Of a DNA stretch of 64,000 nucleotides, positions 22,006-64,000 are shown piece after piece; position 1 is the stretch's first letter, and every line of letters begins with the position of its first letter. Below the pieces are notes generated by a model. That model saw nothing but the letters and a program-made list of their open reading frames with translations, was not told where the DNA came from and made no database searches. The stretch lies in IMG/VR virus record IMGVR_UViG_3300020186_000013, positions 144,146-208,145 of that record, one strand, 5' to 3'. The position numbers and the translations under genes were made by a program.

Positions 22006-22009
22006 ATAG

Positions 22010-50168: not shown

Positions 50169-50221
50169 GGGCAAGACTCCAAGTAAGGGTCTAGCCGTCC
50201 TTAGCGAAACGTGACGTCCTG

Positions 50222-50707
50222 TCAGACAGTACACGGCGTCGTCGAAGCACACCGGTTGGCACCGTGCTCGTGTGCGTCCACGCCGCCCTGCATCTTCATC
50301 TCGCACCTCTGGCTCCCGCAGGACGGGAAGTACACGCGGTTCAAGTACAGCTTGGTCATGTCCTTGCCGCACACGAAGCACGCACGGGGCTTGGGCTGGT
50401 GCAGTGCGTAGGGCGGGTCGCACGGCCTGGCCGTCCAGAAGTGCTCCCTAAGCGTCTCGTAGGGGAGCACCACGATGTCAGAGTCCGTACGCCTGTCGAA
50501 CTCCCGAGCAAAGTGCGTCATCACCACCACACACGGGAACACCGCGTGCTCGGGGTCGGCCGGGCAGTGACGGGTGACGTGGGTGTGGTTGGGGGGCGTG
50601 CCGTCGGGGAACACGTCCAGTGCTGCGAGCAACTCCTTTGAGGTGTTGCAGACGATGATCTTGCGGGAAACGACGTGCATCCTGTCCTCCGTGTCGATGT
50701 CGGGCAT
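50222..50707 (-). CDS. Hypothetical protein with C-terminal CxxC...CxxxxC
   Basis: ACFVCG...SCGSQRC; GGAG SD. Confidence 0.65.
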   Translation of the reverse strand: MPDIDTEDRMHVVSRKIIVCNTSKELLAALDVFPDGTPPNHTHVTRHCPADPEHAVFPCVVVMTHFAREFDRRTDSDIVVLPYETLREHFWTARPCDPPYALHQPKPRACFVCGKDMTKLYLNRVYFPSCGSQRCEMKMQGGVDAHEHGANRCASTTPCTV

Positions 50708-50709
50708 GG

Positions 50710-50913
50710 TCATTTCTTGTTGGCTAACAGTGGGATGTCGGTGACTAGCTTCTTACCGCAGAACATGCAGTACCTGACGGGGATGGACTTCTCCTGCCCC
50801 ATGTGCCACCCTGGCGTCTTCACGTCCTTGTCATTCCGGCACGGGACCAACCAGATGATGTGGTGCTTGACGTCGGGGCAGCAGGTCGGGTGGTCGAATC
50901 GGTCGGGGGTCAT
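50710..50913 (-). CDS. Small Cys-rich hypothetical protein
   Basis: TCC...YCMFCG; TAATG coupling. Confidence 0.65.
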   Translation of the reverse strand: MTPDRFDHPTCCPDVKHHIIWLVPCRNDKDVKTPGWHMGQEKSIPVRYCMFCGKKLVTDIPLLANKK

Positions 50914-51098
50914 TACTTGCGGTCCTCCTCGTTGAGAATGGCGAAGCCGACTGTCTCGTACGCAAAGATCGACAGCGGGAAGTGCTCCCGCTTCACGTAC
51001 ATGGTAGTCTCCGTGAGCGTGGTGACCGGTCACGGGGACAAGTCCAGCTCGTCGATCGGGTGCGTGTCGTGCATCGCCTGCGAATAGTTGTAGTTCAC
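50913..51098 (-). pseudogene. 62-codon frame with an in-frame TGA at codon 23 (pseudogene, readthrough, or two mini-ORFs)
   Basis: VNYNYSQAMHDTHPIDELDLSP*PVTTLTETTMYVKREHFPLSIFAYETVGFAILNEEDRK*; coupled to both neighbours. Confidence 0.45.
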
Positions 51099-51316
51099 TC
51101 TTTGCGGTACTCCTCGGTCTTGCCCGCCGCCATGCAGTCGAAGTACCGGGAGCAATTACCCAGGAACTTCTCCTTGGGTAGCAGCTTGGGGTCGTACGGG
51201 ATGCCTAAGAGTACACCGATCTCGCGGTACACGTCCAGCCAGCAGACGTCGTCGAACTCCTGGGCCAGCATCTTGCGGCACGCGGCCTCAAGGGCTTGGT
51301 GGTCAACAGTCATCAT
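51095..51316 (-). CDS. Small hypothetical protein
   Basis: AAGGAG SD; coding-like. Confidence 0.7.
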   Translation of the reverse strand: MMTVDHQALEAACRKMLAQEFDDVCWLDVYREIGVLLGIPYDPKLLPKEKFLGNCSRYFDCMAAGKTEEYRKE

Positions 51317-51326
51317 GGACTCCTTG

Positions 51327-52355
51327 TTAGCCGAGTCGCTTGGTGGGCGACTCCTCTTTGATGATTAACGTCATCTCCCGCACGGATAAGAGCATCGACA
51401 CGCCACACTCGACCCTGGTTACAACCTGAGTAATGATAGGGTGCCGTCGACTCACGTCGTCGAACAGGTCTTCCAGCACGCCCATCGCCACGGTGCCGTA
51501 CAGGCTCTTGTTGGCACACCTGACGGCCGCGTTGACGCAAGTCGGAATGACGGCGTCCCGCTCGTACCCCCAACCGTACTCCGACGTGAACGGGGTCAGG
51601 GTGACACGGGCTCGCGTCAGCTCGTCGATGCCGGCCAGGTGCAGGGCGAACTCTTCAGCCGTCGTTAGCGTGTCCTTGATCAACCCCGCTGAGTGTGCAA
51701 AGGTCTGACTGAACACCGCATCGACCAGCTCGTGAACGATATCTCGGGGCGGCAACCGGTCACTACTGATGCAGTCTTGAAACTGCTTACGCTGCTCCGG
51801 CGACAACTTGATAACGTCCGGCAGCCTGTTCATGATCGTTATCGCCGAGCGGACCAAGCTGGCCAAAAACTGCGGACTACGGATGGTGATGAGCCGGCGA
51901 GTAGGCAGAGCGGACTTGTACCTCTCCGGGTCGTATACCCAACTCAGCCTCCGGACCATCTCGATGACGAACAGCCGCTTGACCCACTCGGGTTTAACGT
52001 CCGCCAGCTCGTTGTCGATGATCTGGAGAGGATCATCGAGGTCGTTCAGCTCGGCACCGGTGCTACGACGTTGCTCGGAGTCCATGACCCATTCCCGCAC
52101 CTCGACGGCCTTGTCCCCGCCGTCGAGGTCCAACGACCGGAGCCGGCGGCGGGCCTTCGCCCACCACCTGACCCGAGCCTCGGCGTGGAACCGGCTCTGT
52201 TCGGCCAGGAGGTCGGCGTACACCAGCAGGGGCGTGTCGTCGTCGGGGCTGTCACGCACGGCCTGCCGCATGCCGATCTCGGTGTCGGTGCGGATGAATC
52301 CGTCGGCCAGCATGCCCTGACGCTTCATGCCGGACTTCTTGTCGTACGTGTTCAT
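51327..52355 (-). CDS. TIGR02996-like domain protein
   Basis: AVRDSPDDDTPLLVYADLLAEQ matches the Gemmata-type TIGR02996 pattern P.DD..RL.YADWL.E. Confidence 0.7.
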   Translation of the reverse strand: MNTYDKKSGMKRQGMLADGFIRTDTEIGMRQAVRDSPDDDTPLLVYADLLAEQSRFHAEARVRWWAKARRRLRSLDLDGGDKAVEVREWVMDSEQRRSTGAELNDLDDPLQIIDNELADVKPEWVKRLFVIEMVRRLSWVYDPERYKSALPTRRLITIRSPQFLASLVRSAITIMNRLPDVIKLSPEQRKQFQDCISSDRLPPRDIVHELVDAVFSQTFAHSAGLIKDTLTTAEEFALHLAGIDELTRARVTLTPFTSEYGWGYERDAVIPTCVNAAVRCANKSLYGTVAMGVLEDLFDDVSRRHPIITQVVTRVECGVSMLLSVREMTLIIKEESPTKRLG

Positions 52356-52433
52356 ACGAGTCTCCAGAAACGAACAAGCGGAGGGGGTATATTACCCACT
52401 CCGCTCGAAATCAGGCAGTCCACGCAAGTGGTA

Positions 52434-54293
52434 TTACTTGCGGCCGAGCTGACTGCCGCCGAGCCCGCCCATCGCCGCACCACCCGCCCCCAACAAACCC
52501 GGCAGGTAGCCCACGAGCTTACGCAGGAAGCCGGCCCTGCCGCCACCACCACCGCCAAGGTTCAAGGCGGCACGCGGCCCGCCATGCACGCCAGACCCGC
52601 CTCCCATCTTACCGGCAGGGAACGGTTGATTCTTGGTCAACAAGCCTGCCCGCCGGGCCGTCGGGTTGGGCATCGGCTTGGGCGGTGCCATCATGGTCTT
52701 TCCGAGACCATAACCGGCACCGCCGGCAGCGATACTGCCAATCATCGCACCCGGTGCATTCATGTCGTCGCCCATCTTCTGGAACATGTGGCCCGCATCC
52801 TTCATCGGCCCCATCATGCTCGCCGAGCCCTTCGTGTCGCCGCAGTCCTCGTTGGCCCGCTTGTGGGCATAGTTCGTCGCGGCCTTGCACAGCTCGTGGG
52901 CCAGGATGCCCCGTGCCTCGCCGTGCAGGTGAGGGAAGGCGACCTTGATGGCCTTGGTCAGCTGGTTGCCCGACACGATCTCAGCCTGGAGGCGTCGAAC
53001 AGCCCCACGCTTCTCCAGTGGCATGAGACGCACCACCTCATTGAGGTAGCCGTCCATGCAGTCCCGTGCGACCTTGACCTGGTACTTGGCCACCTTAGTG
53101 AGGATGACCCGCTTGACGGCCCGCTGAAGTTGATTGTCCGAGGCTTGCTTCTTCTTCTTGCGACCCTTGACAGCCTTGTACGCACCGTACCCGAGTGCAC
53201 CGGCACCAAGGGCGGCAGCCAGGGGGCCGAGCAGCCCCATGCCGCGACCCGGAGCCGCCTTGGCGGCGGGCACACCCTCACCCGTTGGGGTGGACGTCAG
53301 GCCCTCGGCCGGCTTCGGCACAATACCGCTCTGGCTCTGGCCCGACAGCTTGGCAGTGATGTCGCCAAGCGATTTGGGCAGAAAGCCCGATGCTCCGCTC
53401 AACTCACGCGGAGGAGGGGCCAGTGCGGGCGAGTTGCCGAGGAACCCGTCCACGGGCTCGGGCTTCTGGGGGAGCATTCCGCTGAGCCGGGACAACGCCC
53501 CACGCTGCGGGCCGGCAAGACTCTCGGGCCGACTCGGAATCAGCCCGGTCAGTTCGTCACCGGCCGTCTTGCCCTCTCGCTTCTTGCGGGTCATGCGGTG
53601 GCCGAGGTACGCACCGCCGCCGATCAGACCCGTGGCGAGCAGGGCCTGCATGGCCGGAGACATCCCGCCCCCGCCGCCAGCGGCAGCAGCACCACCAGCG
53701 GCGGGATCACCGGCTGGGTTACCCGCATTGGGCGTGGCCGCATCGGCCGGGTCGGGCTTGGACACGGAGACGTCGGACGGCGGTCCGCCGAGATCCAGGC
53801 CGGCTCCAGGGGCAGGCGTGGCAGCTGGACCGCCCTTACCCTTGAAGGGGACACTCAAGATGCCCGCCCCAGCACCGCCGAGAATCCCTAACGAACCGAG
53901 CCCGACCCCGAGCTTGTTCCTGGCCAACCAGCTGGCCGGCACCGGAGGGGCAGCGAGCTTCACCAGCTCATTGAACGCCTGGGGGTCCGCGTAAGCATTC
54001 TTGCAGAACGCCGCCAAGGGCATCCGGCAGACGCCCGCCAGGTGCTGAATCTCGTCGCGATTGAGGCCGCTGTCGGCGGCGAGCTTGTTGACGTATGGTG
54101 CCTCGGCAGCCGCAGCGGCCAGGGCGGCGATCTTGCTCATCGAAACCTCCGTGTTTGAAGAAGCGGACTTCTCGTCGTTACCGACGCGATCGGGTAGGGC
54201 CTTGATGTTCGGGGTGTGGTCGGCCCACCGCTTGGCCGTTGCCGGCTTTTGCGAAAACATCCAGCGTTGCTGGGCCTTGGACTTGAAAGGCAC
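52434..54293 (-). CDS. 619-aa Gly/Ala/Pro-rich K-x-A-motif protein with an N-terminal PFKSKAQ module
   Basis: GGAGG SD before GTG 54293; EKSA, SKIA, NKLA, VKLA, GKTA, KKQA, CKAA, HKRA; five glycine-zipper helices. Confidence 0.75.
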   Translation of the reverse strand: MPFKSKAQQRWMFSQKPATAKRWADHTPNIKALPDRVGNDEKSASSNTEVSMSKIAALAAAAAEAPYVNKLAADSGLNRDEIQHLAGVCRMPLAAFCKNAYADPQAFNELVKLAAPPVPASWLARNKLGVGLGSLGILGGAGAGILSVPFKGKGGPAATPAPGAGLDLGGPPSDVSVSKPDPADAATPNAGNPAGDPAAGGAAAAGGGGGMSPAMQALLATGLIGGGAYLGHRMTRKKREGKTAGDELTGLIPSRPESLAGPQRGALSRLSGMLPQKPEPVDGFLGNSPALAPPPRELSGASGFLPKSLGDITAKLSGQSQSGIVPKPAEGLTSTPTGEGVPAAKAAPGRGMGLLGPLAAALGAGALGYGAYKAVKGRKKKKQASDNQLQRAVKRVILTKVAKYQVKVARDCMDGYLNEVVRLMPLEKRGAVRRLQAEIVSGNQLTKAIKVAFPHLHGEARGILAHELCKAATNYAHKRANEDCGDTKGSASMMGPMKDAGHMFQKMGDDMNAPGAMIGSIAAGGAGYGLGKTMMAPPKPMPNPTARRAGLLTKNQPFPAGKMGGGSGVHGGPRAALNLGGGGGGRAGFLRKLVGYLPGLLGAGGAAMGGLGGSQLGRK

Positions 54294-54348
54294 GGGCACC
54301 CCTCCATGGATGTCCTTATGTTCGCAACTTCCGGCACCAAACACAAGC

Positions 54349-54372
54349 CGGCGTGGGGACGGCCCCACGCCG
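54349..54372 (-). terminator. Probable terminator hairpin
   Basis: CGGCGTGGGG-ACGG-CCCCACGCCG perfect 10-bp stem; GCTTGTGTTT follows on the minus strand. Confidence 0.55.
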
Positions 54373-54395
54373 ATCTAGAAACTGGAATCTACGTC

Positions 54396-55193
54396 TCAGC
54401 CCGCCGGAGCATCGAACCCACCGACCAGCTCACCCGGCTTAGCTTCCGCCGCCTTCTTGGCCCGCCGCTCGTCGATGAGCTGTTGCACATTGGGCGGGAC
54501 CGGGGGCTTGATGCACGCATGGATCAGTCGCATGTACTTGCCCATGAACGCCTTCATGGGCTCACTGTGGGGATGGCCGTCCTCCCGCCTGCCGGGGATG
54601 ACCTGACGGACGATCCCCTTCATGAGTTCGACGAACGGCCCATCGCCGCCATGGTTGTCCCCGAACTTGGCGTACAGGCCGTCAAGGCCGTCAGTCAGCA
54701 CCATGTTGACGAGCTGCTTCACCTGGTTGGCGAGCAACGTGCACACAATGCCGTCCGTGAAACCCTGACCCTCAACGATCTCGACCGGCGTGTGGATCAT
54801 GACGGGCAGGATCGTGCCGTCGTCCCACTCCAGCATGTATAGGAGCTTGGTCGAGGCCAGTGTTCGCTTGGGCATGGCCCGCGTTGCGGTGACAATGGCG
54901 TTCCACACCGGAGCCAACGCCTGCACGGCACTCGGTGAATGGCTCAGAGCCTCGATGTAGGTGAATACCTCGGGATGCAGCTTCAGCCGGGTCTGCATCT
55001 CGTCGGTGTCGATTGAGACGACATGCCCTTGCAACCACCCCAGGAACGCCTCGGGGTTGATGACGTGCCGGTGGACGTCGGGAACTTCCTCGTCCTTGCA
55101 GTAAGCATCGAAAAAGTGCGTCAACGCCAGGGTCACCTGACGGTCCCGCTCAGGACTCGGCTGACTGAAGTCCATTTCGTCGCTACTCGGCAC
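54396..55193 (-). CDS. Hypothetical protein (265 aa)
   Basis: Coding-like ORF. Confidence 0.7.
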   Translation of the reverse strand: MPSSDEMDFSQPSPERDRQVTLALTHFFDAYCKDEEVPDVHRHVINPEAFLGWLQGHVVSIDTDEMQTRLKLHPEVFTYIEALSHSPSAVQALAPVWNAIVTATRAMPKRTLASTKLLYMLEWDDGTILPVMIHTPVEIVEGQGFTDGIVCTLLANQVKQLVNMVLTDGLDGLYAKFGDNHGGDGPFVELMKGIVRQVIPGRREDGHPHSEPMKAFMGKYMRLIHACIKPPVPPNVQQLIDERRAKKAAEAKPGELVGGFDAPAG

Positions 55194-55539
55194 GGTCGCA
55201 CTCCCTCTGGGAAGGCCAATCCGGGTTGCCGGCCTTCTCGTACTTCAGCTCGTTGGGGGTTAAGACACGCATGCCCAACATGCGGGCCAGTTTGTGCAGG
55301 TCCTCGGTCTCGTAGACGGCGTACTGCTGCTTGTGGGCGAACATGCCCTCGCGGCCGAACCGGTCATCCACGAAGAGCTTGCCGTGGTCGTCGCTCTCGG
55401 GCAGGCAGTCCGCTTCGAGCCAGTCCACGCCGCACGGACCGCCGTGCACGAACAGACCGGACGAGTAGCACGGCTTCCACTGGGAGTAGACCGTGCCCTC
55501 GGGCATGCTCATCAGTTCGTCGCGGGAGACGATTCGCAT
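55183..55539 (-). CDS. Hypothetical phage protein (MRIVSRDELMSMPEGTVY)
   Basis: TGATG coupling; coding-like. Confidence 0.7.
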   Translation of the reverse strand: MRIVSRDELMSMPEGTVYSQWKPCYSSGLFVHGGPCGVDWLEADCLPESDDHGKLFVDDRFGREGMFAHKQQYAVYETEDLHKLARMLGMRVLTPNELKYEKAGNPDWPSQRECDRAE

Positions 55540-55925
55540 CAGATGATCCGGAGTTCTTCGGACTTCTTGACGCCGTCCATGCCGGGCTGGGATTCGCCGG
55601 TGGTCACGTGCACCGCCCCGGAGTCCTGCATGGTGCCCGCCACCTTGCTGCTCGGGCTGATCGTGCACCGCACGTGGTTAGACAGCTGGAACCCGTGGTT
55701 GCTGTCCACGGGAAAGAACTGCACGGGGCGGTTCTTATCGAGGTACGCCACAGCGAACTTAATGAAGTCGTTCGCGGACGGCGGCTTGGCGTTCTTGTCC
55801 GGCTTGATGCCGTGCTTCATGCGGGCCTCGTCCACGTACGCCTGGAACTCCTTAGTAAGGAGGGCGATGAGGTGGGGTAGGTCCTCGGTGGCCGGGTTTG
55901 TGTGGTAGATCGAGTCGCCAAACAT
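55539..55925 (-). CDS. Hypothetical protein (128 aa)
   Basis: Coding-like from ATG 55925. Confidence 0.65.
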   Translation of the reverse strand: MFGDSIYHTNPATEDLPHLIALLTKEFQAYVDEARMKHGIKPDKNAKPPSANDFIKFAVAYLDKNRPVQFFPVDSNHGFQLSNHVRCTISPSSKVAGTMQDSGAVHVTTGESQPGMDGVKKSEELRII

Positions 55926-55965
55926 CCTGTTCGCCCTGGTTCGTGGTTGGTAGTGTCTGCGGCCT

Positions 55966-56280
55966 TCAGCCCTTCTTCGGCTTCTTCGGGTGCATCGCCG
56001 GATACGCGAGCGGAACCACCTCGACCTCATCCATCAGTGCCGCGATGGACTTCTCCATGGACGAGAGGGGCGGCGGGTTGTCCTTGATCCGCTTCGACCG
56101 CTGGGCCAGCTTCGCCTGAAGGATGGCGATGTGGCCCTCCATCTCGGACTTCAGGAACGCGACGATCTGTTCGTCGGTCCAGTCGTTGCGGGCGACGTTA
56201 GGGGAGTGCAAGTTACTGCACTCTCCGTCCGCCCAGCTGATGTGCACCATCAGCGAGATCTGACAGAGGTCGGGTTCCAT
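55966..56280 (-). CDS. Hypothetical protein (104 aa)
   Basis: TAATG coupling to the tubulin gene. Confidence 0.65.
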   Translation of the reverse strand: MEPDLCQISLMVHISWADGECSNLHSPNVARNDWTDEQIVAFLKSEMEGHIAILQAKLAQRSKRIKDNPPPLSSMEKSIAALMDEVEVVPLAYPAMHPKKPKKG

Positions 56281-57620
56281 TAGTCCTGTACACCCAAGAA
56301 AGAGGCCACGCCTTTGGGGCTCGACGCGGTGTCGAGCATGCCCTTCTTCCCGAGTTCGGCCAGCCGGTCGAGTGGCGGGTCAAGCTCGGAAATCATCGTG
56401 TAGCACTGTAGCCCAGGCTCGGCACCCAAGTAAAGGCCACGGTGGATGACGGTGGGCACCTTCTTGCTGTACGCCGACCCGATCAAGCGGTCGAGCTGCG
56501 TGAACCCGGCGTCGAAGTAGTCGAGGCTGAGACTGTCAAGCACGTCCTGGCTGCCCACAAACAGGCACGCCGCCTTCTTGCCCCGCTTGAGATCGACCGT
56601 GGCCAGGACGTTGTTGGTCAAGTCCTCGCGGATGCGAGTCGAGATGTCCGCCGGGGTGTTGATCGACTCCACAGGTATGTCGGCCGCACCGAGTACCACC
56701 ACGCCGCCGTCGAGGAGCTGGGCGAACTCCGCACGGTCGAACGTGATGAACTCGCTGTGCACGGCGGCGAGCTGGTTGAACAAGTGGAACAGCTGACTCA
56801 CGGTCTCGTTGGCCGTGGCGTGCAGGCGGGTCATGCCCGGCTTGTACAGCTCATGGATGCGGGCGTTGTCGATGATCAGCATCGGGCTGACCTTCATGTC
56901 CAGGAGGGTCTTGAACGTCTGCACAGCATTCTTCGACACCTGCTGCCCCTCGGTCGTCGGCGGCAACGACACGATACAACCAACCCTCGGGGGCTTGCCC
57001 TTGCTCTCCATGTACTTGCGGGCCAGGTCGACCAGAATCGGCGTCGTGCCGCTGCCAGTCCCACCACCCAGCCCAACACAGATCAGAGCGTAGTCCGGCG
57101 AATTGCCCCACGACCGTGTCATGAGGTCCCACACTTCCTCCTCACGCCCGCGAAGGCTGTTGGCAGCGAAGATGGGGTCCTTGGCGGCACCACCCACGGC
57201 CAGGTTGAGCTTGGGGATGGGCTCGGCGATACCCGCGAAGTCCATATCGGTCGTGTTCATCACCGCCACGCGGCGGTAGCCAAGCTGGTAGAAGGCGTTG
57301 GCGATGCGACTGCCGCCTTGGCCGGTGCCCAGGAACGCCATGTTGAAGGCCACGTCGTAACCGAACTCATCGTTGACCACGACCTGCTTGACGGCCTGCT
57401 GGCGGGACGAGGGGCTCAGCGACTTGGCCACGTTGGTCGGCGTCGGGCTGCCCGCACGCGGCGGAATCATGACCTTGGGGGCGATGGCACCCGTCGCCGG
57501 GGCCATAACCTTCGGGGCGACGCTCCGGGTCACCACCGGCTTGTTGCCCACGGCCTTGCCCGCAGCGGCTGCCTGCTCGGCGACCTTCTGCATTTCCTCT
57601 TCCGTCGGTTTCTCAGCCAC
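56280..57620 (-). CDS. Tubulin/FtsZ-superfamily GTPase (PhuZ/TubZ/CetZ-like) with low-complexity N-terminal extension; alternative start 57695
   Basis: FLGTGQGGSRIANAF, VMNTTDMD, GGAAKD, signature GLGGGTGSG, IIDN, T7-like loop TFDRAEF; AGGAGG SD before GTG 57620. Confidence 0.9.
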   Translation of the reverse strand: MAEKPTEEEMQKVAEQAAAAGKAVGNKPVVTRSVAPKVMAPATGAIAPKVMIPPRAGSPTPTNVAKSLSPSSRQQAVKQVVVNDEFGYDVAFNMAFLGTGQGGSRIANAFYQLGYRRVAVMNTTDMDFAGIAEPIPKLNLAVGGAAKDPIFAANSLRGREEEVWDLMTRSWGNSPDYALICVGLGGGTGSGTTPILVDLARKYMESKGKPPRVGCIVSLPPTTEGQQVSKNAVQTFKTLLDMKVSPMLIIDNARIHELYKPGMTRLHATANETVSQLFHLFNQLAAVHSEFITFDRAEFAQLLDGGVVVLGAADIPVESINTPADISTRIREDLTNNVLATVDLKRGKKAACLFVGSQDVLDSLSLDYFDAGFTQLDRLIGSAYSKKVPTVIHRGLYLGAEPGLQCYTMISELDPPLDRLAELGKKGMLDTASSPKGVASFLGVQD

Positions 57621-57727
57621 CACATCCTCCTTGTTGGCGGGCGATGGAGGACCTTTTGGGAAATCCCGCCAGCCCATCTCGCCGTTCCGCATCATGGTGA
57701 TTCGTTCCTCTCCGAAGAGGCAGTAGA

Positions 57728-58792
57728 CTACCCACCCACGCCCCAAATGGTCAACCACAGGTCGGCGAATGCTTTGCGGTTGACAGATAAAGGCCAGTCG
57801 CCCGACTGGAGGCGAAACAACTTGGTCTTGTCCGTCAGGGCGGCGATCGCGGTGGTGAGGAACTGCACGCTGCTGGGTGCGGCCACGGGTGCCTGCATCC
57901 AATTGGCCCCTAACTCGCACGGCACCAAGACGCCGTTGTAGTTGTTGGTGATGAGTTCTGAGAACGGAGCCACGTCGTACGTGATCACGGGCAGACCGCA
58001 GGCGTGTGCCCGCGTCGCGACGAGGCCGAAGTCTGCCCTCACGGACGGGATCAGGCACCAATCGTGCGTCTGCATCACATGCGTCTGCTCAACCATGGAT
58101 GTCGGATAAAGCACCATCAGCCGCCCCTGCCACACAGCCACCAAGCCCTGAATCCGTCCCCGATCTCGCTTCGACCAAGTCTTGGTGCACATAAGCGTCA
58201 CGCGGCTGTGCTCGACCTGTTCGAGGAGCTGATTGACAATCCGCAGTGTCATCAGCCCGCACTCGTCGATACAGTGCGTGTCGCACGCCACCAAGAGCTT
58301 AACCCCGCCGCTGCCACTCAGACCCTCGTGCGGTGTCAACGTAAGACCGGAGTCCCACCGGCCCCACGTCAGTACCTTGTCGTCGGGCACCTTATCCTTG
58401 AAGATGTGTGTCCGCACCAGGTGGTGACACAGCTTGGTCGGGCACACGATAGTGTCGAAGCCACCGGCTACGAACCCCTTGGCGTCAAGTGTCAAATGGT
58501 GCCAGGACGGGACTAAGATGTGCTTGGCCTTGTCCGACACGAGTGTTGCCATGTCGTGGTACTCTTCGTCGCACACGAACCACACACAACGGGAAGCGGT
58601 ACGAACGGCCAAGTACAGGCCGTTGTCCCGGCCGCTGACAACGTGCTTGTCCCAGTACGGGTGAATGCCTTGCTCGTGCACGCCCAAGGCAACGAGCTTA
58701 ACGTCAATGCCGGCGGCGACACCGAGGTCGGCCAGGCGGATCGCCGCCATAGTGACCTCGTTACGACCGTAGGGGGTCAGGATGGTGATCAT
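57728..58792 (-). CDS. GT4-like (GT-B) glycosyltransferase with divergent catalytic motif
   Basis: LIPSVRADFGLVATRAHACGLPVITYDVAPFSELI....NGVLV. Confidence 0.75.
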   Translation of the reverse strand: MITILTPYGRNEVTMAAIRLADLGVAAGIDVKLVALGVHEQGIHPYWDKHVVSGRDNGLYLAVRTASRCVWFVCDEEYHDMATLVSDKAKHILVPSWHHLTLDAKGFVAGGFDTIVCPTKLCHHLVRTHIFKDKVPDDKVLTWGRWDSGLTLTPHEGLSGSGGVKLLVACDTHCIDECGLMTLRIVNQLLEQVEHSRVTLMCTKTWSKRDRGRIQGLVAVWQGRLMVLYPTSMVEQTHVMQTHDWCLIPSVRADFGLVATRAHACGLPVITYDVAPFSELITNNYNGVLVPCELGANWMQAPVAAPSSVQFLTTAIAALTDKTKLFRLQSGDWPLSVNRKAFADLWLTIWGVGG

Positions 58793-59466
58793 CGGCCGTC
58801 TCCGTGATTAGTGTGCTTGTGAAACACGAAGTACGGCGAGTTGTCCCGGCAACCCAATAGCTCGCCCCACGGCGTGCCGAACTTCCACGAGGTGTAGGGA
58901 AAGCTGATCTGATCCCGCAGGCTGTGCTTCTGGATCTGATCCCACCAGAACGTGCTGAACTCGACCACGTCGGGATAGTTGTGTCGGACGAGGCAGGCGG
59001 TCTCGGCCAGGCCGTAGGACGGCGGGAACCCGTTGAACTTGTACTCACTGACTTGCTTCTGCATCACCTCGACCGAGTCCTTGCGGAACTTGGTGCACGC
59101 CACGAACTCGGAGTACGCACAGTTGCGATGTGGGTGCTTGAACGTGGCGATCTCACGCGGCCCGGTGATTGAGTCGAGGATAGTCGAGATGGGCGTGCGT
59201 GACTGGAGGCAGGCGTCGATCCAAACCCAGCAGTCGTAGTCCGGGAGCAGCTCGTGCACCATCACCTTATGGTAGCGGGCGGTGCGTCGCGAGCTGCCGG
59301 GGTGCCGCCAAGCTAAGGGGCGGGCTTGCCACGGGGCAGGGAACCCGTGGTCGTGGTCCGTGAACACGAAGTGGTCGACCCCGACCTCTTCACGCCACTC
59401 GTACAGCGGGGACCTGAGCCGATCTGTGATCGAGCCAAACAGTCCCGTGTATACCGCTACACGCAT
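58789..59466 (-). CDS. DUF616 (TOD1/MUCI70-like) glycosyltransferase-domain protein
   Basis: VYTGLFGS.TD, FVFTD, ARYHK, WVWIDA, FKHPHRNCAYSE, ETACLVR, RDQISFPY. Confidence 0.85.
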   Translation of the reverse strand: MRVAVYTGLFGSITDRLRSPLYEWREEVGVDHFVFTDHDHGFPAPWQARPLAWRHPGSSRRTARYHKVMVHELLPDYDCWVWIDACLQSRTPISTILDSITGPREIATFKHPHRNCAYSEFVACTKFRKDSVEVMQKQVSEYKFNGFPPSYGLAETACLVRHNYPDVVEFSTFWWDQIQKHSLRDQISFPYTSWKFGTPWGELLGCRDNSPYFVFHKHTNHGDGR

Positions 59467-59496
59467 GGCAGACCTTCTTCCTTGAAGGGGTGTGAA

Positions 59497-60249
59497 TTAG
59501 GGACGTGGCAGCGAGTTGTCCTCTTTCTCGTTGGCGGGGGTAACAAACGACTTCACCATACACAGCACTGTCGGGTTCACGGCACGCAAGCGGCGATACG
59601 CCCCCGCACGCCCGGCCTCGGACATTGTCACCACCTCGGCCGCGATTTCCTTAGCGATCGCCAGGAGGTGCCGGACACCTACTTCCTCCCGGCCGTGGGC
59701 AATCTTGCTCAACCGGTCCAGCAAGTCCTTTCGTACCAGGTTCCAACCTGTCTCCAGGTCGCTAACCTTATCGTCCTTGGCAGGCATACCCAAGTCCAGC
59801 ATCACGGCAACGCCGTCGATCACCATCATGCCCTCGCCGACACACACGGTCTGCGACACCGTGTCGCCCTCAGCAGCGGTGAGCGTCTGGAACCGGGCCT
59901 TGATCGGGGCCTGCTTCGTTTGCTCCCGGATGGCGTCTTCGAGGACCTTTTCATTCCGCTCCCTGTGCCCCATCTTGCGTGGCGGCTCTTCCTTCTTTGT
60001 CGGAGGCTCGGGCAACTTGGCGGGCCGTTCGGGGGCCACGGCGGGCGTCCAGTGCGTCCACCGCATCGTGTCCGGGGCACACATGTCGCCGAACGTGTAG
60101 TTGTACTTGGTCGCGAGCAAGTTGCCGGTCGATGGGTAGTCATGCACGATCGAACGCACGCGGACGAGGTCAATCTCCCCGTGCCGGGAGATCGCCCAGT
60201 AGTACCCCGGATACTTCGGCTCGTCGGTGGACCAGACAGTCGCAGACAT
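59497..60249 (-). CDS. Hypothetical protein (250 aa)
   Basis: TGATG coupling; coding-like. Confidence 0.7.
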   Translation of the reverse strand: MSATVWSTDEPKYPGYYWAISRHGEIDLVRVRSIVHDYPSTGNLLATKYNYTFGDMCAPDTMRWTHWTPAVAPERPAKLPEPPTKKEEPPRKMGHRERNEKVLEDAIREQTKQAPIKARFQTLTAAEGDTVSQTVCVGEGMMVIDGVAVMLDLGMPAKDDKVSDLETGWNLVRKDLLDRLSKIAHGREEVGVRHLLAIAKEIAAEVVTMSEAGRAGAYRRLRAVNPTVLCMVKSFVTPANEKEDNSLPRP

Positions 60250-61061
60250 CACGTCACCTTTCGGAACCACTTGCCCCGCTTGTACCGCTCTCCTCGGGTA
60301 GCAGCACGGTAGTGAAATACAAACGAGCCGGGCACCACGGCGGTCTTGAGACCCGCCTTGTGCCACCGTCCTTGCAGCTCGTCCTCGTTGAGAGTCATCA
60401 GCGGGGTCGGGTTGGGTCGACCCTTACTGTTCCACGGGTTGGAGGGCTTGAACACGTGCTCCTTGTCGAACGCATTCTGCCACCACACGACCGTCTTGGC
60501 CATCATGCAGAAGCCGTTGACCGACGAGAGCACCACGTTGTTAAAGTGCCTCTTGTAGAGAATCTCCGCGATGCCGTCCAGGTACTCGGGACTGTCGTTG
60601 AGGTGGTAGCCCAGCAGGTACTTGTCGACCTCCTGACGTCCCTCGGCCGTGATACCGGGGGCGTTCGACACGGGGCCGACCAGAGCGTAGCCCTTGTCGA
60701 GCCAGTGGACCAGGGACGTCGTCCACCCCCTAGTGAACAGCACGTCACTGTTCGTGCAGCAGGCGAACTCGAAGTTGAGTAGGCGAGCCGCCCGCAGACC
60801 CTCGTTCCAGGACCGGGTTAGCCCGCCATTGTCGGGAAAGCCGAGGTACATGAAGCGGGTCTGGTACTCCTTGGCGACCTCGGCCAGAAGCGGGTGCGGT
60901 CCGTTCTCGTTGTACTTGTAGCGGTCGAGCATCTCGGGGCTGGCGTCGTCAACGACCATTACGGCGGCGTCGGGCGTCGTCCGGAAGAGGGACTCGCACG
61001 CCGCCGCCGCATAGTCGAACTGCCCGTAGGTCGGGATGATGACCAGGAATCTGGGTTGCAT
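60249..61061 (-). CDS. Glycosyltransferase GT2
   Basis: VIIPTY...VMVVDDAS...NGGLTRSWNEGL...CCTNSDVLFT..W...GPVSN...VNGFCMM...FVFHY. Confidence 0.9.
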   Translation of the reverse strand: MQPRFLVIIPTYGQFDYAAAACESLFRTTPDAAVMVVDDASPEMLDRYKYNENGPHPLLAEVAKEYQTRFMYLGFPDNGGLTRSWNEGLRAARLLNFEFACCTNSDVLFTRGWTTSLVHWLDKGYALVGPVSNAPGITAEGRQEVDKYLLGYHLNDSPEYLDGIAEILYKRHFNNVVLSSVNGFCMMAKTVVWWQNAFDKEHVFKPSNPWNSKGRPNPTPLMTLNEDELQGRWHKAGLKTAVVPGSFVFHYRAATRGERYKRGKWFRKVT

Positions 61062-63010
61062 CACTGACCTCCACCCCCGCCGCCCTGCTGCATCTGGGCC
61101 ATGGCCTGGTTACCCGCCTGGCTCTTTGTGTCCCGACGGATCTGGTCCATGCGGGCGGTGACCAGGCTATGCAGAACCTGGTTACCCTGCTTGAGCTTAC
61201 GAAGCTCAATGTCCTTCTCGCCCTCGGGCCTCCCAAGCAAACCCTGAGCAATCGTGTCTGCCGCCGCCATCATGTCCTGCGGAGTCTGGGGAACATTCGG
61301 CGACAGCTGCTGCATGTACTGCGTGACAGGACCAGCCATGCTTCCTTGCATAGCAGTAGCAGCGTCAGGGGCGGCACCACCAGGAGCACCACCGCCGCCT
61401 CCACCGCCAGCACCGCCGGGAGGAGGACCGCCACCAGCACCAGCAGACCCGCCTCCCTGAGCAGGAGGCTGACCTTTTGCAATTTGTTGTGCAAAGCCCG
61501 CTTGCTCCATTTCTTCCTGAGTGCGGCTCTGGATCTCGGACTGAGTCCGGGACTCCTCGGCCATTTGCTTCTGCTCTTGAATCCAGTCGTACCCCAGGGC
61601 CGACAGGGCACTGGTCCCCGACAGCTGCTGACTCATCATGAGCTGGAGGGCCGACATCTGCTTCTGCATGTCGTCGGCGATGGTGACCCGCTTCAGGATC
61701 GCGTCCACCGTCTCCCACGACAGGATCTGACCGACCTGCTTGACAATCCACTGGAGGGCCGAGTTGCAGTCGTGCACCAGGTGGTGCCACGTGCTCTCGA
61801 ACAGCCGCAGGGCCACCGGGGCCGTCTGAAGCTGGAGGGAGCCCTTGTACAGTTCCACAGGCGTGCCGGCGTCATTGAGCAGGGTCTCCATGCCCTGATC
61901 CATCAGCTCACGCGGGGCGAGCTGGTTGGCCTCGGCCCCGAGCATCTGGTAGTTGACGGGGAACGGCAGCACCTGCCACGACGCAGGATCGCGGCGGCGA
62001 CGCTTGATCATCGACTGGACCTGGCCCCGGAAGTCGCCGCCGTTGTACATCATCAGCGGATCTTGGGCGATGCCACCCGTCGAACTGCTGCCCTGGCGGG
62101 CACCCGGTGTGATGAGGCGGAACGGAATGACGTAGTCGAGGGCAATGGCCTCGTTGAAGCGGTGCAAGACCTGGACGTACCAGATCTGGCGGAAGTTCGA
62201 GATGATCCGGGGGATACCCCAGCCCCGGTTGAGCACGCCCGCGAGGGTCGGCTCTTTCATGTGGTAGATGGTGTCGTCGTTAAATCGGAACAGTTGGTTC
62301 TTGTGAATGGCGTCCAAGACCTGCTTGGGCACCCGTTCAAGATGGAACAGGTTGCCCTGGCGGACGGCTCGCTTGTACTCCTCGGGGATACGCCAGAGGT
62401 AGTGACATTCGTGCGTGTACGGGTCATGGAGGAGTTCGATCTCGTGCGGGTTCCACCGCTTGACCTTGATCTTGGTCTCTTCGTCATCGGCCTTGTCGTC
62501 GATCCGCCACTTGCCCCGGTAGCCGCCGCCCACCTTGCACTGCGGGCACGTGGCCGTGAAGTCCGGCATGTTGAAGGCGAACCCGAACGCGGCGTTCTCC
62601 ATCACCACCTTGAGCGGGTAATGGGCACCGCACTTGGGGCACCCCAGGAACCGCTTGAAAGGCACGATGACCGAGCTGAACGAGTTGCCGTAGCACATCC
62701 GGTCGCGGAGGAGGTTCTGCAACACCGTCATGATGTCGAGGGTGTCGTCGAGGAAGCCATCCCACTTCTTCTTCTCGTCGTCACTGACGTTGCGGATCTC
62801 CACGTCCGTGAGGAAGTAGGAGATGATCCGCTCCATCGCCATCCGGTAGGTGCCGAAGATCGAGTAGATGTACTCGCACCAGTACAGTGCGTTCCGCATC
62901 GTACCGGGGACGGCGAGAGACGAGACGTCGAGGAAGGGATCTGGGAACTGTTCGCCGCCTCCCACGCCGGAGAAGCGAGCGAACTGACCGCGAAGTGTAG
63001 CAGATCCCAT
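61061..63010 (-). CDS. Probable portal protein with Zn-ribbon insertion
   Basis: Portal-like pattern: RDRMCYGNSF, RWNPHEI, IYHMKEP....GWGIPRI, EAIA...IPFRL, QVLPFPVNYQMLG; helical Gln/Gly-rich C-terminal tail; CPKC...CPQC insert. Confidence 0.65.
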   Translation of the reverse strand: MGSATLRGQFARFSGVGGGEQFPDPFLDVSSLAVPGTMRNALYWCEYIYSIFGTYRMAMERIISYFLTDVEIRNVSDDEKKKWDGFLDDTLDIMTVLQNLLRDRMCYGNSFSSVIVPFKRFLGCPKCGAHYPLKVVMENAAFGFAFNMPDFTATCPQCKVGGGYRGKWRIDDKADDEETKIKVKRWNPHEIELLHDPYTHECHYLWRIPEEYKRAVRQGNLFHLERVPKQVLDAIHKNQLFRFNDDTIYHMKEPTLAGVLNRGWGIPRIISNFRQIWYVQVLHRFNEAIALDYVIPFRLITPGARQGSSSTGGIAQDPLMMYNGGDFRGQVQSMIKRRRRDPASWQVLPFPVNYQMLGAEANQLAPRELMDQGMETLLNDAGTPVELYKGSLQLQTAPVALRLFESTWHHLVHDCNSALQWIVKQVGQILSWETVDAILKRVTIADDMQKQMSALQLMMSQQLSGTSALSALGYDWIQEQKQMAEESRTQSEIQSRTQEEMEQAGFAQQIAKGQPPAQGGGSAGAGGGPPPGGAGGGGGGGAPGGAAPDAATAMQGSMAGPVTQYMQQLSPNVPQTPQDMMAAADTIAQGLLGRPEGEKDIELRKLKQGNQVLHSLVTARMDQIRRDTKSQAGNQAMAQMQQGGGGGGQ

Positions 63011-63049
63011 TGAAGGACCTCCATGTCCGTGTTGTGATCTGCCCGAGGC

Positions 63050-63220
63050 TTACTGCTTTGGCGTCTCAGCGGCCTTCTCGGCCATCTTGCTCAGCGTGTC
63101 GTGGCCGCACCCCTGGTGCACGTGGCCGCACTTCTGATCCGCCGGCTGGTCGGCAGCCTTCTTCTCGTCGGGCTTGGGTGCTTCGCCCTCGCCCGAGCAA
63201 ACTCCAGTCTTCTCCATCAT
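63050..63220 (-). CDS. 56-aa protein not in the ORF track (MMEKTGVCSGEGEAPKPDEKKAADQPADQKCGHVHQGCGHDTLSKMAEKAAETPKQ)
   Basis: GAGGAG SD; manually translated; immediately upstream of the portal gene. Confidence 0.7.
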   Translation of the reverse strand: MMEKTGVCSGEGEAPKPDEKKAADQPADQKCGHVHQGCGHDTLSKMAEKAAETPKQ

Positions 63221-63247
63221 AACCTGCTCCTCTGTGTACGGACTACA

Positions 63248-64000
63248 TCACTTCACGTCTTCGTAGTCCAGGGTCTCGACGTCGTGCTTGACCAACACAA
63301 CGTGGTCGAACACGCCTTGAGGGTACGAGAAACCCATCGAAGACACAACGAAGGTCTTCTTCAGGTGCGGAACGTGCAGCTTGATCTGCTTGATGTCGAG
63401 ATCCGGCGGCTCGTACTGCTGGCCGTCCTCGTACCGCGTGTCGTACACCAGGGCGATGCAGTTCTTGCTCTCGATCACGTCGTGGTAGAACGCCGACTGC
63501 TTGCCCGTCTCGGGAAACTCGAAGAACACCCGGCGGCGGGCCTTGAGACCGATCGGACCGGTGATGTACGGCAGACCGAGAGTCTCGAAGCCGACAATAA
63601 TCCCGTCCCGGTGATCGTCCGCCAGTTCGTCGAGGTGCTGGTCGCGATCGCGGCTGCGGTCATCGTCGTCGCGGCGGTGATCGCGGGCCGCACGGACCGA
63701 GTCCTCAAAAACTGGCTTCTGAGAGTCGGCAGCGTACGGGTTATCATCGCCGACCTTCCTGCGAATGACCGACTTCGCCGGAGCCATACGAGGGCGTGGG
63801 TCAGCCGGACGGGTCGACAGCTCAGGCGACGGGCGGGACTCGTGAGATTGTCGCGGGGCCTGCTCGACGGCCCCGACCCGCTGGTTGAGCGTCTGCATGC
63901 CCTGGGCCAACTGCGACAACAACGCGACCAGGTTGGGGTCGGTTTGTGGCGGCGACGGCGGGGCGTACTGCGGCGGCGGTGCATACTGCGGCGGGGGCGG
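63248..64000 (-). CDS. Hypothetical protein, 5' partial (enters from the right edge), with PPPQYA repeats
   Basis: Open frame continues past the track start at 63922 to the window end. Confidence 0.7.
   Translation of the reverse strand, partial: PPPPQYAPPPQYAPPSPPQTDPNLVALLSQLAQGMQTLNQRVGAVEQAPRQSHESRPSPELSTRPADPRPRMAPAKSVIRRKVGDDNPYAADSQKPVFEDSVRAARDHRRDDDDRSRDRDQHLDELADDHRDGIIVGFETLGLPYITGPIGLKARRRVFFEFPETGKQSAFYHDVIESKNCIALVYDTRYEDGQQYEPPDLDIKQIKLHVPHLKKTFVVSSMGFSYPQGVFDHVVLVKHDVETLDYEDVK

What the first reader, a model, noticed from the sequence alone, without database searches (positions are those of the whole stretch)
56280..57695. Tubulin/FtsZ-family GTPase in a phage with its own RNAP
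Seen: intact GGGTGSG signature and T7-like loop (TFDRAEF), preceded by a Pro/Ala/Lys-rich extension of about 80 aa. No chimallin-like gene is recognisable in this window. Established: PhuZ forms the spindle in nucleus-forming jumbo phages, TubZ partitions plasmids and phages, and Planctomycetes lack FtsZ. Inference: if the host is a planctomycete, this phage would bring a tubulin-family filament into an FtsZ-less cell.
Basis: partly seen in the sequence, partly recalled or inferred. Interest (0 to 1): 0.7.

Follow-up and report, generated by a model that had tools for sequence, protein, structure and literature searches.

The report
Uncharacterised tubulin of chimallin-less jumbo phages
The gene is a real, intact tubulin/FtsZ-type GTPase from a large uncharacterised clade of phage tubulins, found in uncultivated ~200-kb phages that have their own RNA polymerase but no recognisable phage-nucleus shell; nothing here supports a host that lacks FtsZ.

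Summary
Window 56280-57695 (-) encodes a 471-aa tubulin/FtsZ-superfamily protein with intact T1, T4 (GGGTGSG) and T7 (TFDRAEF) motifs. A Pro/Ala/Val/Lys-rich, mostly disordered extension of about 105-115 aa (not 80) precedes the core.

The AF2 model (pLDDT 90) is closest to plasmid TubZ, then CetZ and FtsZ; PhuZ is distant. In trees it is cleanly separate from FtsZ (100/100). It forms a well-supported clade (100/99) inside a large, mostly viral TubZ-like radiation. Its relation to classical TubZ and PhuZ is unresolved.

The element is a 208-kb tailed jumbo phage (CheckV 93%) from microbial mats. It has one set of bacterial-type RNAP genes, no chimallin and no integrase. Five 90-100% complete relatives show the same combination.

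The gene sits in a conserved block: portal, glycosyltransferases, tubulin, a small unknown protein. No TubR-like partner or centromere repeats were found. A C-terminal peptide ([VL]A.[FY]LGV.D) is conserved in 118 of 120 close homologues.

Most likely it is a GTP-driven filament that organises lytic infection, but this function is inferred. The host is unknown and the planctomycete/FtsZ-less idea has no support. I rate it a new variant of a known kind, of moderate interest.

The parts
56280..57695 (-). Tubulin/FtsZ-superfamily GTPase gene (471 aa, P0001); stop codon at 56280-56282
   Evidence: Translation; PF00091 at 5e-11; AF2 pLDDT 90; Foldseek to TubZ 1.7e-24; JGI gene call has identical coordinates
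57707..57713 (-). Shine-Dalgarno-like GGAGAGG, 11 nt upstream of the ATG
   Evidence: Read directly from the sequence
57381..57695 (-). N-terminal extension (aa 1-105). It is Ala/Pro/Val/Lys-rich and mostly disordered, with a conserved hairpin motif (MMRNGEMGWRDF) and a helix at aa 32-48.
   Evidence: pLDDT profile and secondary structure; composition; alignment A2; motif in 8 of 27 clade members; T1 loop at median residue 108 in 120 homologues
57312..57329 (-). T1 (phosphate-binding) loop, GTGQGG, aa 123-128
   Evidence: G123, G125 and G128 invariant in 76 sequences; aligns to the TubZ/RepX T1 loop
57048..57068 (-). T4 tubulin signature motif, GGGTGSG, aa 210-216
   Evidence: G211, G212, G214 and G216 invariant
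56724..56744 (-). T7 (synergy) loop, TFDRAEF, aa 318-324, with acidic D320 and E323
   Evidence: D320 invariant in 76 sequences; F319, D320 and E323 invariant in 20 close homologues; aligns to HFDASEF of TubZ/RepX 4ei7
56283..56318 (-). Conserved C-terminal tail peptide (aa 460-471, GVASFLGVQD), after a short linker
   Evidence: Tail motif in 118 of 120 close homologues and in part of the more distant representatives; compared with FtsZ, PhuZ and TubZ C-termini
61061..63010 (-). Probable portal protein (649 aa), the most conserved gene of the block upstream of the tubulin
   Evidence: ESM Atlas feature and structure neighbours carry portal families; 48-66% identical and syntenic in about 35 related loci
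60249..61061 (-). Family-2 glycosyltransferase, conserved in the block
   Evidence: PF00535 at 3.5e-10; synteny
58789..59466 (-). TOD1/MUCI70-like glycosyltransferase, present in most relatives
   Evidence: PF04765 at 2.9e-15; synteny
57728..58792 (-). Family-1 (GT4-type) glycosyltransferase, directly upstream of the tubulin
   Evidence: PF00534 at 4.5e-9; synteny
55966..56280 (-). 104-aa ORF whose start overlaps the tubulin stop codon by one base. It is not conserved in relatives and has no family match.
55539..55925 (-). 128-aa protein of a family conserved just downstream of the tubulin in clade A. It has a helix-helix-three-strand fold with no match to solved structures, so it is not recognisably TubR.
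   Evidence: Found in 30 loci; alignment A3; AF2 pLDDT 78; no Foldseek hit at E<0.3, best VIA Z 3.7
54396..55193 (-). 265-aa protein of unknown function, also syntenic in 16 relatives

Best explanation
The gene encodes a polymerising tubulin-superfamily GTPase. It belongs to a large, so far uncharacterised clade within the phage/plasmid 'TubZ-like' branch. That clade is distinct from FtsZ, and its relation to PhuZ and to the classical plasmid TubZs is unresolved.

What is shown: it keeps every element needed to bind GTP (T1-T6) and to activate hydrolysis in the next subunit (T7 D320/E323). It is a conserved gene of a lineage of ~194-235-kb tailed phages. These phages carry a single bacterial-type RNA polymerase, no chimallin and no integrase. 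The gene lies in a conserved block next to the portal gene and three glycosyltransferases.

What is inferred: during lytic infection it assembles GTP-dependent, dynamic filaments that organise the infected cell. They might position replicating phage DNA, or position procapsids and assembly sites. This would resemble what PhuZ does, but without a chimallin nucleus. The flexible N-terminal extension and the conserved C-terminal peptide ([VL]A.[FY]LGV.D) would be the handles that either lock neighbouring subunits or dock an adaptor or cargo.
For: Identity and fold:
- PF00091 at 5e-11.
- PDB by sequence: TubZ/RepX 4ei7 at 1.8e-10, with T1, T3, T4, T5, T6 and T7 aligned.
- AF2 pLDDT 90 and pTM 0.80. 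Foldseek: TubZ 1.7e-24, CetZ 4e-22, FtsZ 3e-20.
- Invariant nucleotide-binding and T7 residues across 76 homologues.

Clade:
- The careful ML tree separates FtsZ at 100/100, gives the query clade 100/99, and places it inside a 30-row radiation of unnamed metagenomic representatives (93/93) that excludes PhuZ, c-st TubZ and Bt TubZ.
- The nearest ESM Atlas clusters are 87-100% viral.
- 177 IMG/VR contigs encode relatives. The representative library holds 990 relatives at E<1e-3.

Phage context:
- TerL, baseplate, tail and head-decoration genes and a probable portal.
- One RNAP beta and a split beta'.
- No chimallin by three methods; the leave-one-out control for the custom model scored 1.7e-62.
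- Five 90-100% complete relatives each have an RNAP beta and no chimallin.
- No tyrosine integrase.
- Conserved synteny of portal, GTs, tubulin and the 128-aa gene in about 35 loci.

Termini: the tail peptide is found in 118 of 120 homologues. Short C-terminal peptides are partner-binding or subunit-binding handles in FtsZ, TubZ and PhuZ (established knowledge); the C-termini themselves were compared.
Against: No experiment or transcript data exists, so polymerisation and GTPase activity are inferred from motifs only. The homodimer prediction gave no verdict, which is neither support nor evidence against.

The cellular role is by analogy. The best-studied analogue, PhuZ, is one of the most distant relatives and acts on a structure (the chimallin nucleus) that this phage lacks. 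No cargo or adaptor was identified.

The closest cultured relatives of the phage (Arash, Vibrio D69) manage without the gene, so it is not essential to the wider group. Position in a morphogenesis block does not prove late expression.
Confidence: 0.5

Rival explanations
1. It is the motor of a type III (TubZRC-like) partition system. Filaments would pull copies of the phage genome apart, so that it is inherited as a low-copy plasmid during a carrier or pseudolysogenic state, as shown for Clostridium phage c-st.
For: The best sequence and structure matches among solved proteins are plasmid TubZ/RepX. Some related viral clusters carry TubZ C-terminal domain families. The lack of an integrase is compatible with an episomal state. 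A conserved C-terminal tail is what TubZ uses to bind TubR (established knowledge).
Against: No TubR-like gene was found. The ORF directly downstream is not conserved. The conserved 128-aa neighbour has no winged-helix or other match to solved structures. There is no array of direct repeats (a tubC-like centromere) near the gene, and only 32 nt of intergenic DNA lie upstream. The gene lies inside a virion-morphogenesis block. The genome looks lytic: it has its own RNAP, 196 of 218 ORFs are on one strand, and there is no integrase.
Confidence: 0.15
2. It interferes with, or borrows, the host divisome. The C-terminal peptide would mimic the conserved C-terminal peptide of FtsZ and bind host FtsZ anchors or regulators (FtsA, SepF, ZipA, MinC). 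This would tether phage filaments to the membrane or block division to enlarge the cell for a jumbo-phage burst.
For: The tail [VL]A.[FY]LGV.D sits at the very C-terminus after a linker, as in FtsZ. It is the most conserved element outside the core (118 of 120).
Against: The resemblance covers 3-4 residues and could be chance. PhuZ and TubZ tails are also short hydrophobic or acidic peptides with other functions. The host and its divisome are unknown, and no binding test was possible. If true, it would argue against an FtsZ-less host.
Confidence: 0.15
3. One reading: a PhuZ-like spindle, possibly with an unrecognised shell, brought into a planctomycete host that has no FtsZ.
For: Tubulin and a phage RNAP co-occur here, as they do in nucleus-forming phages (PMC7824862 reports the correlation). 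A shell protein with no sequence similarity to chimallin cannot be excluded, because many proteins of 500-750 aa have no annotation.
Against: No chimallin was found by the Pfam model, by the phiKZ protein or by a custom 7-member HMM. There is one unsplit RNAP beta rather than the two split sets of Chimalliviridae. PhuZ is distant, and the PhuZ C-domain family PF22334 is not matched. No datum links the phage to Planctomycetota. The only cellular association found is with a Nannocystaceae MAG that has FtsZ.
Confidence: 0.05
4. It is a decaying or non-polymerising relic whose motifs are conserved by recent descent only.
For: None specific. There are no expression data.
Against: The reading frame is intact, with a ribosome-binding site. 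Hundreds of homologues at 30-69% identity keep all catalytic residues, the termini and the gene position. This is the signature of purifying selection over long divergence.
Confidence: 0.03

Closest known systems
TubZ / RepX of Bacillus plasmids (pBtoxis TubZ; B. cereus TubZ, PDB 4ei7, 2xka)
   Same: It is the best match by sequence (1.8e-10) and by fold (1.7e-24, TM 0.77 on the target). The motifs T1 G.GQGG, T3 GAAxxP, T4 GGGTG.G, T6 IDNA and T7 xFDxxEFAQ are shared. Both have a long C-terminal region ending in a flexible tail.
   Different: Identity is only about 20%. In the tree, Bt TubZ and the Bacillus TubZ-like proteins fall outside the 30-row radiation that holds the query. There is no TubR gene and no centromere repeats. 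The gene is in a lytic-looking jumbo phage, not a plasmid. An N-terminal extension of about 110 aa is present.
PhuZ of nucleus-forming phages (phiKZ gp39, 201phi2-1 gp59)
   Same: Both are phage-encoded tubulins in jumbo phages that also encode a multisubunit RNAP. Both are non-FtsZ. Both end in a short C-terminal peptide.
   Different: PhuZ is not listed at E<=1 by sequence against PDB chains. Foldseek to PhuZ models gives about 1e-10 with TM 0.43-0.46. The PhuZ C-domain family PF22334 hits phiKZ PhuZ at 1.7e-37 but does not hit this protein. There is no chimallin partner. The tail is hydrophobic (FLGV) rather than an acidic knuckle. The protein is about 145 aa longer.
TubZ of Clostridium phage c-st (PDB 3v3t, 4xcq)
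   Same: Both are phage-borne TubZ-like GTPases.
   Different: The sequence match is weak (E 0.012-0.08). It forms a very long branch in the tree. c-st TubZ works with TubR, TubY and a centromere in a plasmid prophage; none of these is seen here.
FtsZ (and archaeal CetZ)
   Same: The fold and GTPase motifs are the same. JGI annotates the homologues as 'cell division GTPase FtsZ'. There is a C-terminal peptide after a linker, as in FtsZ.
   Different: The NCBIfam ftsZ equivalog scores 40 bits against a cut-off of 295. The split from FtsZ has 100/100 support. No FtsZ_C or CetZ_C family match appears. CetZ was compared by fold and by PDB sequence search only, not in the tree.
Salmonella orphan phage Arash and Vibrio phages D69/D148/D181 (the phage, not the gene)
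   Same: They are the nearest cultured relatives of the genome. TerL is about 26-30% identical and RNAP beta about 32% identical over 83-85% of its length. They are large myoviruses with their own RNAP (PMC10585845).
   Different: Arash and D69, the two searched, have no tubulin homologue. Their genomes are 181-188 kb. The relationship is very distant.

Membership tests
Tubulin/FtsZ superfamily | GTP-binding N-domain with the T1 loop and the tubulin signature motif [SAG]GGTG[SA]G (T4) | tested here: met
   GTGQGG at aa 123-128 and GGGTGSG at aa 210-216. PF00091 scores 43.6 bits, above its cut-off of 33. The glycines are invariant in 76 homologues.
Tubulin/FtsZ superfamily | T7 loop with acidic residues that activate GTP hydrolysis in the adjacent subunit | tested here: met
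   TFDRAEF at aa 318-324. D320 is invariant in 76 sequences and E323 is invariant in 20. It aligns to the T7 loop of TubZ/RepX. Activity itself was not tested.
Tubulin/FtsZ superfamily | Two-domain fold (GTPase domain, core helix H7, C-terminal activation domain) | tested here: met
   In the AF2 model, residues 110-460 have block-mean pLDDT of 92-98. At least 500 PDB matches have E<=0.001; the 50 listed are all TubZ, CetZ or FtsZ.
Tubulin/FtsZ superfamily | GTP-dependent polymerisation into protofilaments | not testable with these tools
   The homodimer prediction gave no verdict. This needs biochemistry or EM.
FtsZ proper | Scores as FtsZ with the curated equivalog model and groups with FtsZ in a tree | tested here: not met
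   TIGR00065 scores 40 bits against a cut-off of 295. FtsZ is split off with 100/100 support. No FtsZ_C match.
TubZ (type III partition, TubZRC) | TubZ-type tubulin | tested here: inconclusive
   It is the closest solved structure and sequence. However, in the tree the relation to Bt, Bacillus and c-st TubZ is an unresolved polytomy, and Tubulin_2 PF13809 scores 23.3 bits, below its cut-off of 27.
TubZ (type III partition, TubZRC) | Adjacent gene for the DNA-binding adaptor TubR | tested here: not met
   The neighbours have no Pfam match. The immediate downstream ORF is not conserved. The conserved 128-aa neighbour has no winged-helix or other match to solved structures. A very divergent adaptor cannot be excluded.
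TubZ (type III partition, TubZRC) | Centromere of iterated repeats (tubC/tubS) next to the operon | tested here: not met
   No repeat array lies in 50000-64000 beyond chance-level pairs, and no tandem repeat is near the gene. Only 32 nt separate it from the upstream gene.
PhuZ | PhuZ-type C-terminal domain and acidic C-terminal tail | tested here: not met
   PF22334 hits phiKZ PhuZ at 1.7e-37 but is absent from this protein's hits at E<=1. The tail is GVASFLGVQD, against the Asp-rich tails of PhuZ.
PhuZ | Occurs together with the nuclear shell protein chimallin | tested here: not met
   The phiKZ gp54 protein, Pfam PF25677 and a custom HMM of 7 chimallins found nothing in the 208-kb genome. 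Nothing was found in 5 near-complete relatives either. This is sequence-level only.
Chimalliviridae (the phage) | Two sets of split beta/beta' RNAP subunits (virion and non-virion) | tested here: not met
   There is one Rpb2_6 match in an open frame of 1044 aa, and one beta' split in two.
CetZ | CetZ C-terminal domain; archaeal origin | tested here: not met
   No PF21011 match. The fold similarity is real (3zid 3.8e-22) but below that to TubZ. CetZ was not in the tree.

The most novel reading that the evidence does not exclude
This clade is a third functional class of phage tubulin, beside PhuZ and partition-type TubZ. In this reading it is a filament system of RNAP-encoding jumbo phages that organises genome or virion assembly without a chimallin nucleus. 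Its conserved C-terminal peptide would be a mimic of the FtsZ tail that plugs the phage filament into host divisome anchors. Alternatively, the peptide would dock a still unknown phage compartment or cargo.
Probability: 0.2. Interest if true: 0.75.

Novelty: new variant of a known kind. Interest (0 to 1): 0.5.

Why it matters
Phage tubulins are understood from two models only. One is PhuZ, which centres and rotates the chimallin nucleus. The other is TubZ, which segregates plasmid prophages.

This gene represents a clade found in at least 177 viral contigs from freshwater, marine and mat metagenomes. It fits neither model. It has no chimallin, no TubR and no centromere. It sits next to the portal gene and has its own conserved N- and C-terminal handles.

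It therefore offers a tractable way to ask what a cytoskeletal filament does for a jumbo phage that has its own transcription machinery but no known nucleus. The protein can be expressed, polymerised and imaged. The tail peptide can be used as bait.

It also cautions against reading 'tubulin plus RNAP' as 'nucleus-forming'. The more eye-catching claim, a tubulin supplied to an FtsZ-less planctomycete, has no support at present.

Tried and rejected
- tblastn of the protein against 50,697 phage records and 72,556 plasmids found no match, even at E 10 for the phages. The family is therefore absent from those two collections (GenBank phage records, PLSDB plasmids), or such records were withheld as too close to the window.
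- The search for related loci with the 76-sequence alignment failed because it was too diverse. It was repeated with 20 sequences.
- Complex prediction with two copies of residues 100-471 gave no verdict (score 0.00). This is not evidence either way.
- Partner search. Pfam on ten neighbours gave only the glycosyltransferases. For the conserved 128-aa neighbour, ESM Atlas, AF2, Foldseek and VIA-align gave no meaningful match.
- Chimallin search. Three sequence-level searches were negative. A structure-based screen of all ORFs was not possible with two fold jobs.
- Host search.
  - The Nannocystaceae lead was tested in 400 further genomes of that phylum. No second clade member was found.
  - The phage RNAP beta did not match that MAG.
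  - The split of beta' at the cyanobacterial position suggested a cyanobacterial link, but generic bacterial models score higher than the cyanobacterial ones, so I dropped that idea.
  - No Planctomycetota genome handle could be obtained, so that phylum could not be searched directly.
- No centromere-like repeats were found.
- The literature searches found no paper describing this clade.
Full report
**The object**

Window 56280-57695 (minus strand) is an open frame of 471 codons. The mechanical ORF list gives a longer TTG-started frame up to 58061. That extension overlaps the upstream glycosyltransferase gene (57728-58792). The ATG at 57695 has a GGAGAGG ribosome-binding site 11 nt upstream. 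JGI called the same gene, and several homologues start with the same N-terminal motif.

There is also a T1 loop, GTGQGG, at residues 123-128.

**Is it a tubulin-family GTPase?**

Yes. The sequence and fold evidence is as follows.
- Pfam Tubulin/FtsZ scores above its cut-off (E 5e-11).
- Against PDB sequences, the best match is the Bacillus TubZ deposited as RepX (4ei7, 1.8e-10). The T1, T3, T4, T5, T6 and T7 loops all align. Dozens of FtsZ chains and CetZ follow.
- With a 76-sequence alignment, AlphaFold2 gives mean pLDDT 90 and pTM 0.80. Block-mean pLDDT is 92-98 across residues 110-460.
- Foldseek ranks Bacillus TubZ first (1.7e-24), then Bt TubZ, CetZ and FtsZ.
- In the viral structure library, the best hit is an uncultured-phage protein named 'FtsZ' (5e-31). 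Named PhuZ proteins appear only at about 1e-10 with TM 0.43-0.46.
- Fourteen positions are invariant in the 76 sequences, among them the T1 and T4 glycines, N277 and the T7 aspartate D320. E323 is invariant among 20 closer homologues.

The machinery for nucleotide binding and for polymerisation-coupled hydrolysis is therefore intact and under selection. Activity itself is inferred.

**The termini**

Over residues 1-105 it is A 15%, P 13%, V 11% and K 10%, and it is mostly low-confidence in the model.

It contains two ordered elements. One is an N-terminal hairpin, MMRNGEMGWRDF, whose motif GE.G.[RK].F recurs in 8 of 27 clade members. The other is a helix at residues 32-48 that is conserved in character. 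In 120 close homologues the T1 loop lies at a median residue of 108 (range 20-147), against 60 in more distant relatives.

At the other end, after the last helix and a short linker, the protein ends in GVASFLGVQD. The pattern [VL]A.[FYHW][LF]G[VI].D is present in 118 of 120 close homologues. It is also present in part of the more distant representatives.

- Bacterial FtsZ ends in D[IT]P[AT]FLR.
- Two archaeal FtsZ end in ELGI..V[DR].
- PhuZ ends in SSGLVFD or DEDGMVV.

The resemblance to the FtsZ tail is short and may be chance. I treat it as an idea, not a finding.

**Which branch of the superfamily?**

I built trees from four sets of sequences. The first was the query clade. The second was unnamed metagenomic representatives. 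The third was reference proteins cut from records fetched here: phiKZ and 201phi2-1 PhuZ, c-st TubZ, pBtoxis TubZ and two Bacillus TubZ-like proteins. The fourth was eight FtsZ sequences from bacteria and a DPANN archaeon.

In the careful tree (52 rows, LG+C20) the main splits are these.
- FtsZ is split from everything else with 100/100 support.
- The query's clade is monophyletic (100/99).
- It lies in a 30-row radiation of metagenomic representatives (93/93) that excludes PhuZ, c-st TubZ, Bt TubZ and the Bacillus proteins.
- All of those emerge from an unresolved base on very long branches.

The quick 94-row tree nested PhuZ and c-st TubZ nearer the query, but with long-branch warnings.

NCBI's FtsZ equivalog scores 40 bits against a cut-off of 295. 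None of the specific C-terminal-domain families (FtsZ_C, CetZ_C, the TubZ_C families) is matched. phiKZ PhuZ, by contrast, matches its family at 1.7e-37.

So the protein is not FtsZ and is not demonstrably PhuZ or classical TubZ. It is a separate, large clade of the phage/plasmid 'TubZ-like' assemblage. CetZ and eukaryotic-type tubulins were not in the tree.

**How common is it?**

- More than 250 homologues at 53-69% identity exist, many on contigs of 190-235 kb.
- The 50%-identity representative library holds 990 relatives at E<1e-3 and 140 at E<1e-30.
- 177 IMG/VR contigs encode relatives.
- The nearest ESM Atlas clusters are 87-100% viral.
- None was found in 50,697 deposited phage records or in PLSDB plasmids.
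- Six literature searches found no description of the clade.

**The genome around it**

The window is the last 64 kb of a single 208,145-bp IMG/VR record (linear, CheckV 93%) from microbial-mat metagenomes. A 215-kb sibling contig exists.

It is a tailed phage. The supporting genes are:
- a large terminase (phrog_675, 1.5e-46);
- a baseplate wedge protein, a minor tail protein and a head-decoration protein;
- a probable portal.

It also encodes:
- a PolA fused to a family-4 UDG;
- a class II ribonucleotide reductase;
- ThyX with an intein-like insert;
- one set of bacterial-type RNAP genes.

The RNAP set consists of an unsplit beta of 1038 aa and a beta' split into 582 and 1285 aa. This is unlike the two sets of split subunits of Chimalliviridae.

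Chimallin was sought in three ways:
- with the phiKZ protein;
- with Pfam PF25677;
- with an HMM I built from seven diverse chimallins, whose leave-one-out control finds Goslar chimallin at 1.7e-62.

The best hit in the genome had E 5.8. Five relatives that are 90-100% complete, one with terminal repeats, also have an RNAP beta and no chimallin. No tyrosine integrase is present. 196 of 218 ORFs lie on one strand.

The nearest cultured phages, by TerL (about 26-30%) and RNAP beta (about 32% over 83-85%), are the Salmonella orphan phage Arash and Vibrio phages D69, D148 and D181. Arash and D69 have no tubulin.

**Neighbourhood**

In about 35 related loci (tubulin identity of 47% or more) the order is conserved: portal, GT2, (TOD1/MUCI70-like GT), GT1, tubulin, then a 128-aa family and a 265-aa family.

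The 104-aa ORF whose start overlaps the tubulin stop codon is not conserved. The 128-aa family folds (pLDDT 78) into two helices and a three-stranded sheet. It has no significant match to solved structures. There are no iterated repeats near the gene, and only 32 nt lie upstream.

The defining companions of TubZ (TubR and a centromere) were looked for and not found. The same holds for the defining companion of PhuZ (chimallin).

**Mechanism**

Shown: an intact, conserved tubulin-family GTPase of a distinct viral clade, fixed in a lineage of RNAP-encoding, chimallin-less jumbo phages, next to morphogenesis genes.

Inferred: it forms GTP-driven filaments during lytic infection that position phage DNA or assembling virions. 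The conserved tail, and perhaps the N-terminal hairpin, would act as the subunit lock or cargo handle.

Rivals:
- a partition motor for a carrier state (0.15);
- divisome mimicry or hijack via the tail (0.15);
- a relic (0.03).

The self-association prediction returned no verdict.

**Host**

The host is unknown. One 13-kb fragment of a related phage is binned in a Nannocystaceae MAG that encodes FtsZ. No second case was found in 400 genomes of that phylum, so this is probably a binning accident. Nothing points to Planctomycetota, and I could not search that phylum directly.

**Verdict**

The family assignment is sound. The 'FtsZ-less host' inference is unsupported. The gene is a new variant of a known kind, of moderate interest mainly because the clade is large, unstudied and fits neither existing model of phage tubulin function.

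Noticed in passing
window 1-1627 (-) together with L008:2656-5772, L008:507-2255 and L007:14565-18422: The phage has a single set of bacterial-type RNAP genes. Beta is unsplit (1038 aa). Beta' is split into 582 aa and 1285 aa at the same model position as the cyanobacterial gamma/beta' split. Generic bacterial models nevertheless score higher than the cyanobacterial ones, and about 800 aa of the second piece match nothing.
   Followed up: partly
P0164, P0183, P0186, P0204, P0260, P0269: Some metagenomic relatives are 745-925 aa long and match the query in 2-3 separate stretches. They may be tandem, fused-dimer tubulins.
   Followed up: no
window 57728-61061 (-): Three glycosyltransferases (GT2, TOD1/MUCI70-like, GT1) always lie between the portal gene and the tubulin gene in this phage clade. 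Their target is unknown: it could be DNA, virion proteins, or conceivably the Pro/Ala/Ser/Thr-rich tubulin extension.
   Followed up: partly
L001:2152-4269 (-), L003:4207-7416 (+), L001:14079-17552 (-): ThyX carries a LAGLIDADG/Hint insert, which looks like an intein. The large terminase is 1069 aa and matches relatives in two pieces, so it may also carry an insert. DNA polymerase A is fused to a family-4 uracil-DNA glycosylase.
   Followed up: no
whole contig G000:C1: There is an extreme strand bias: 196 of 218 candidate ORFs are on the minus strand. No tyrosine integrase was found.
   Followed up: partly
window 55539-55925 (-): A 128-aa protein family is conserved next to the tubulin in 30 related loci. 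It has a confidently predicted helix-helix-three-strand core and no match among solved structures.
   Followed up: yes
window 43669-43812 and 48523-48677: In-frame tandem repeats (60-nt and 30-nt units) lie inside the 1759-aa and 729-aa proteins downstream, which look like virion or tail proteins. Both are Gly/Pro-rich.
   Followed up: no
window 21932-22081 (-): Two adjacent tRNA genes: Arg (TCT) and Met (CAT).
   Followed up: no
L018 / G003 contig C162: A 13-kb fragment of a related jumbo phage (tubulin 55% identical, portal 63%) is binned in a public Nannocystaceae MAG. This is probably mis-binning rather than a host signal.
   Followed up: yes
window 5959-8304 (-): An adenosylcobalamin-dependent ribonucleoside-triphosphate reductase (RTPR-like, 2.9e-68) with an N-terminal ATP-cone.
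   Followed up: no
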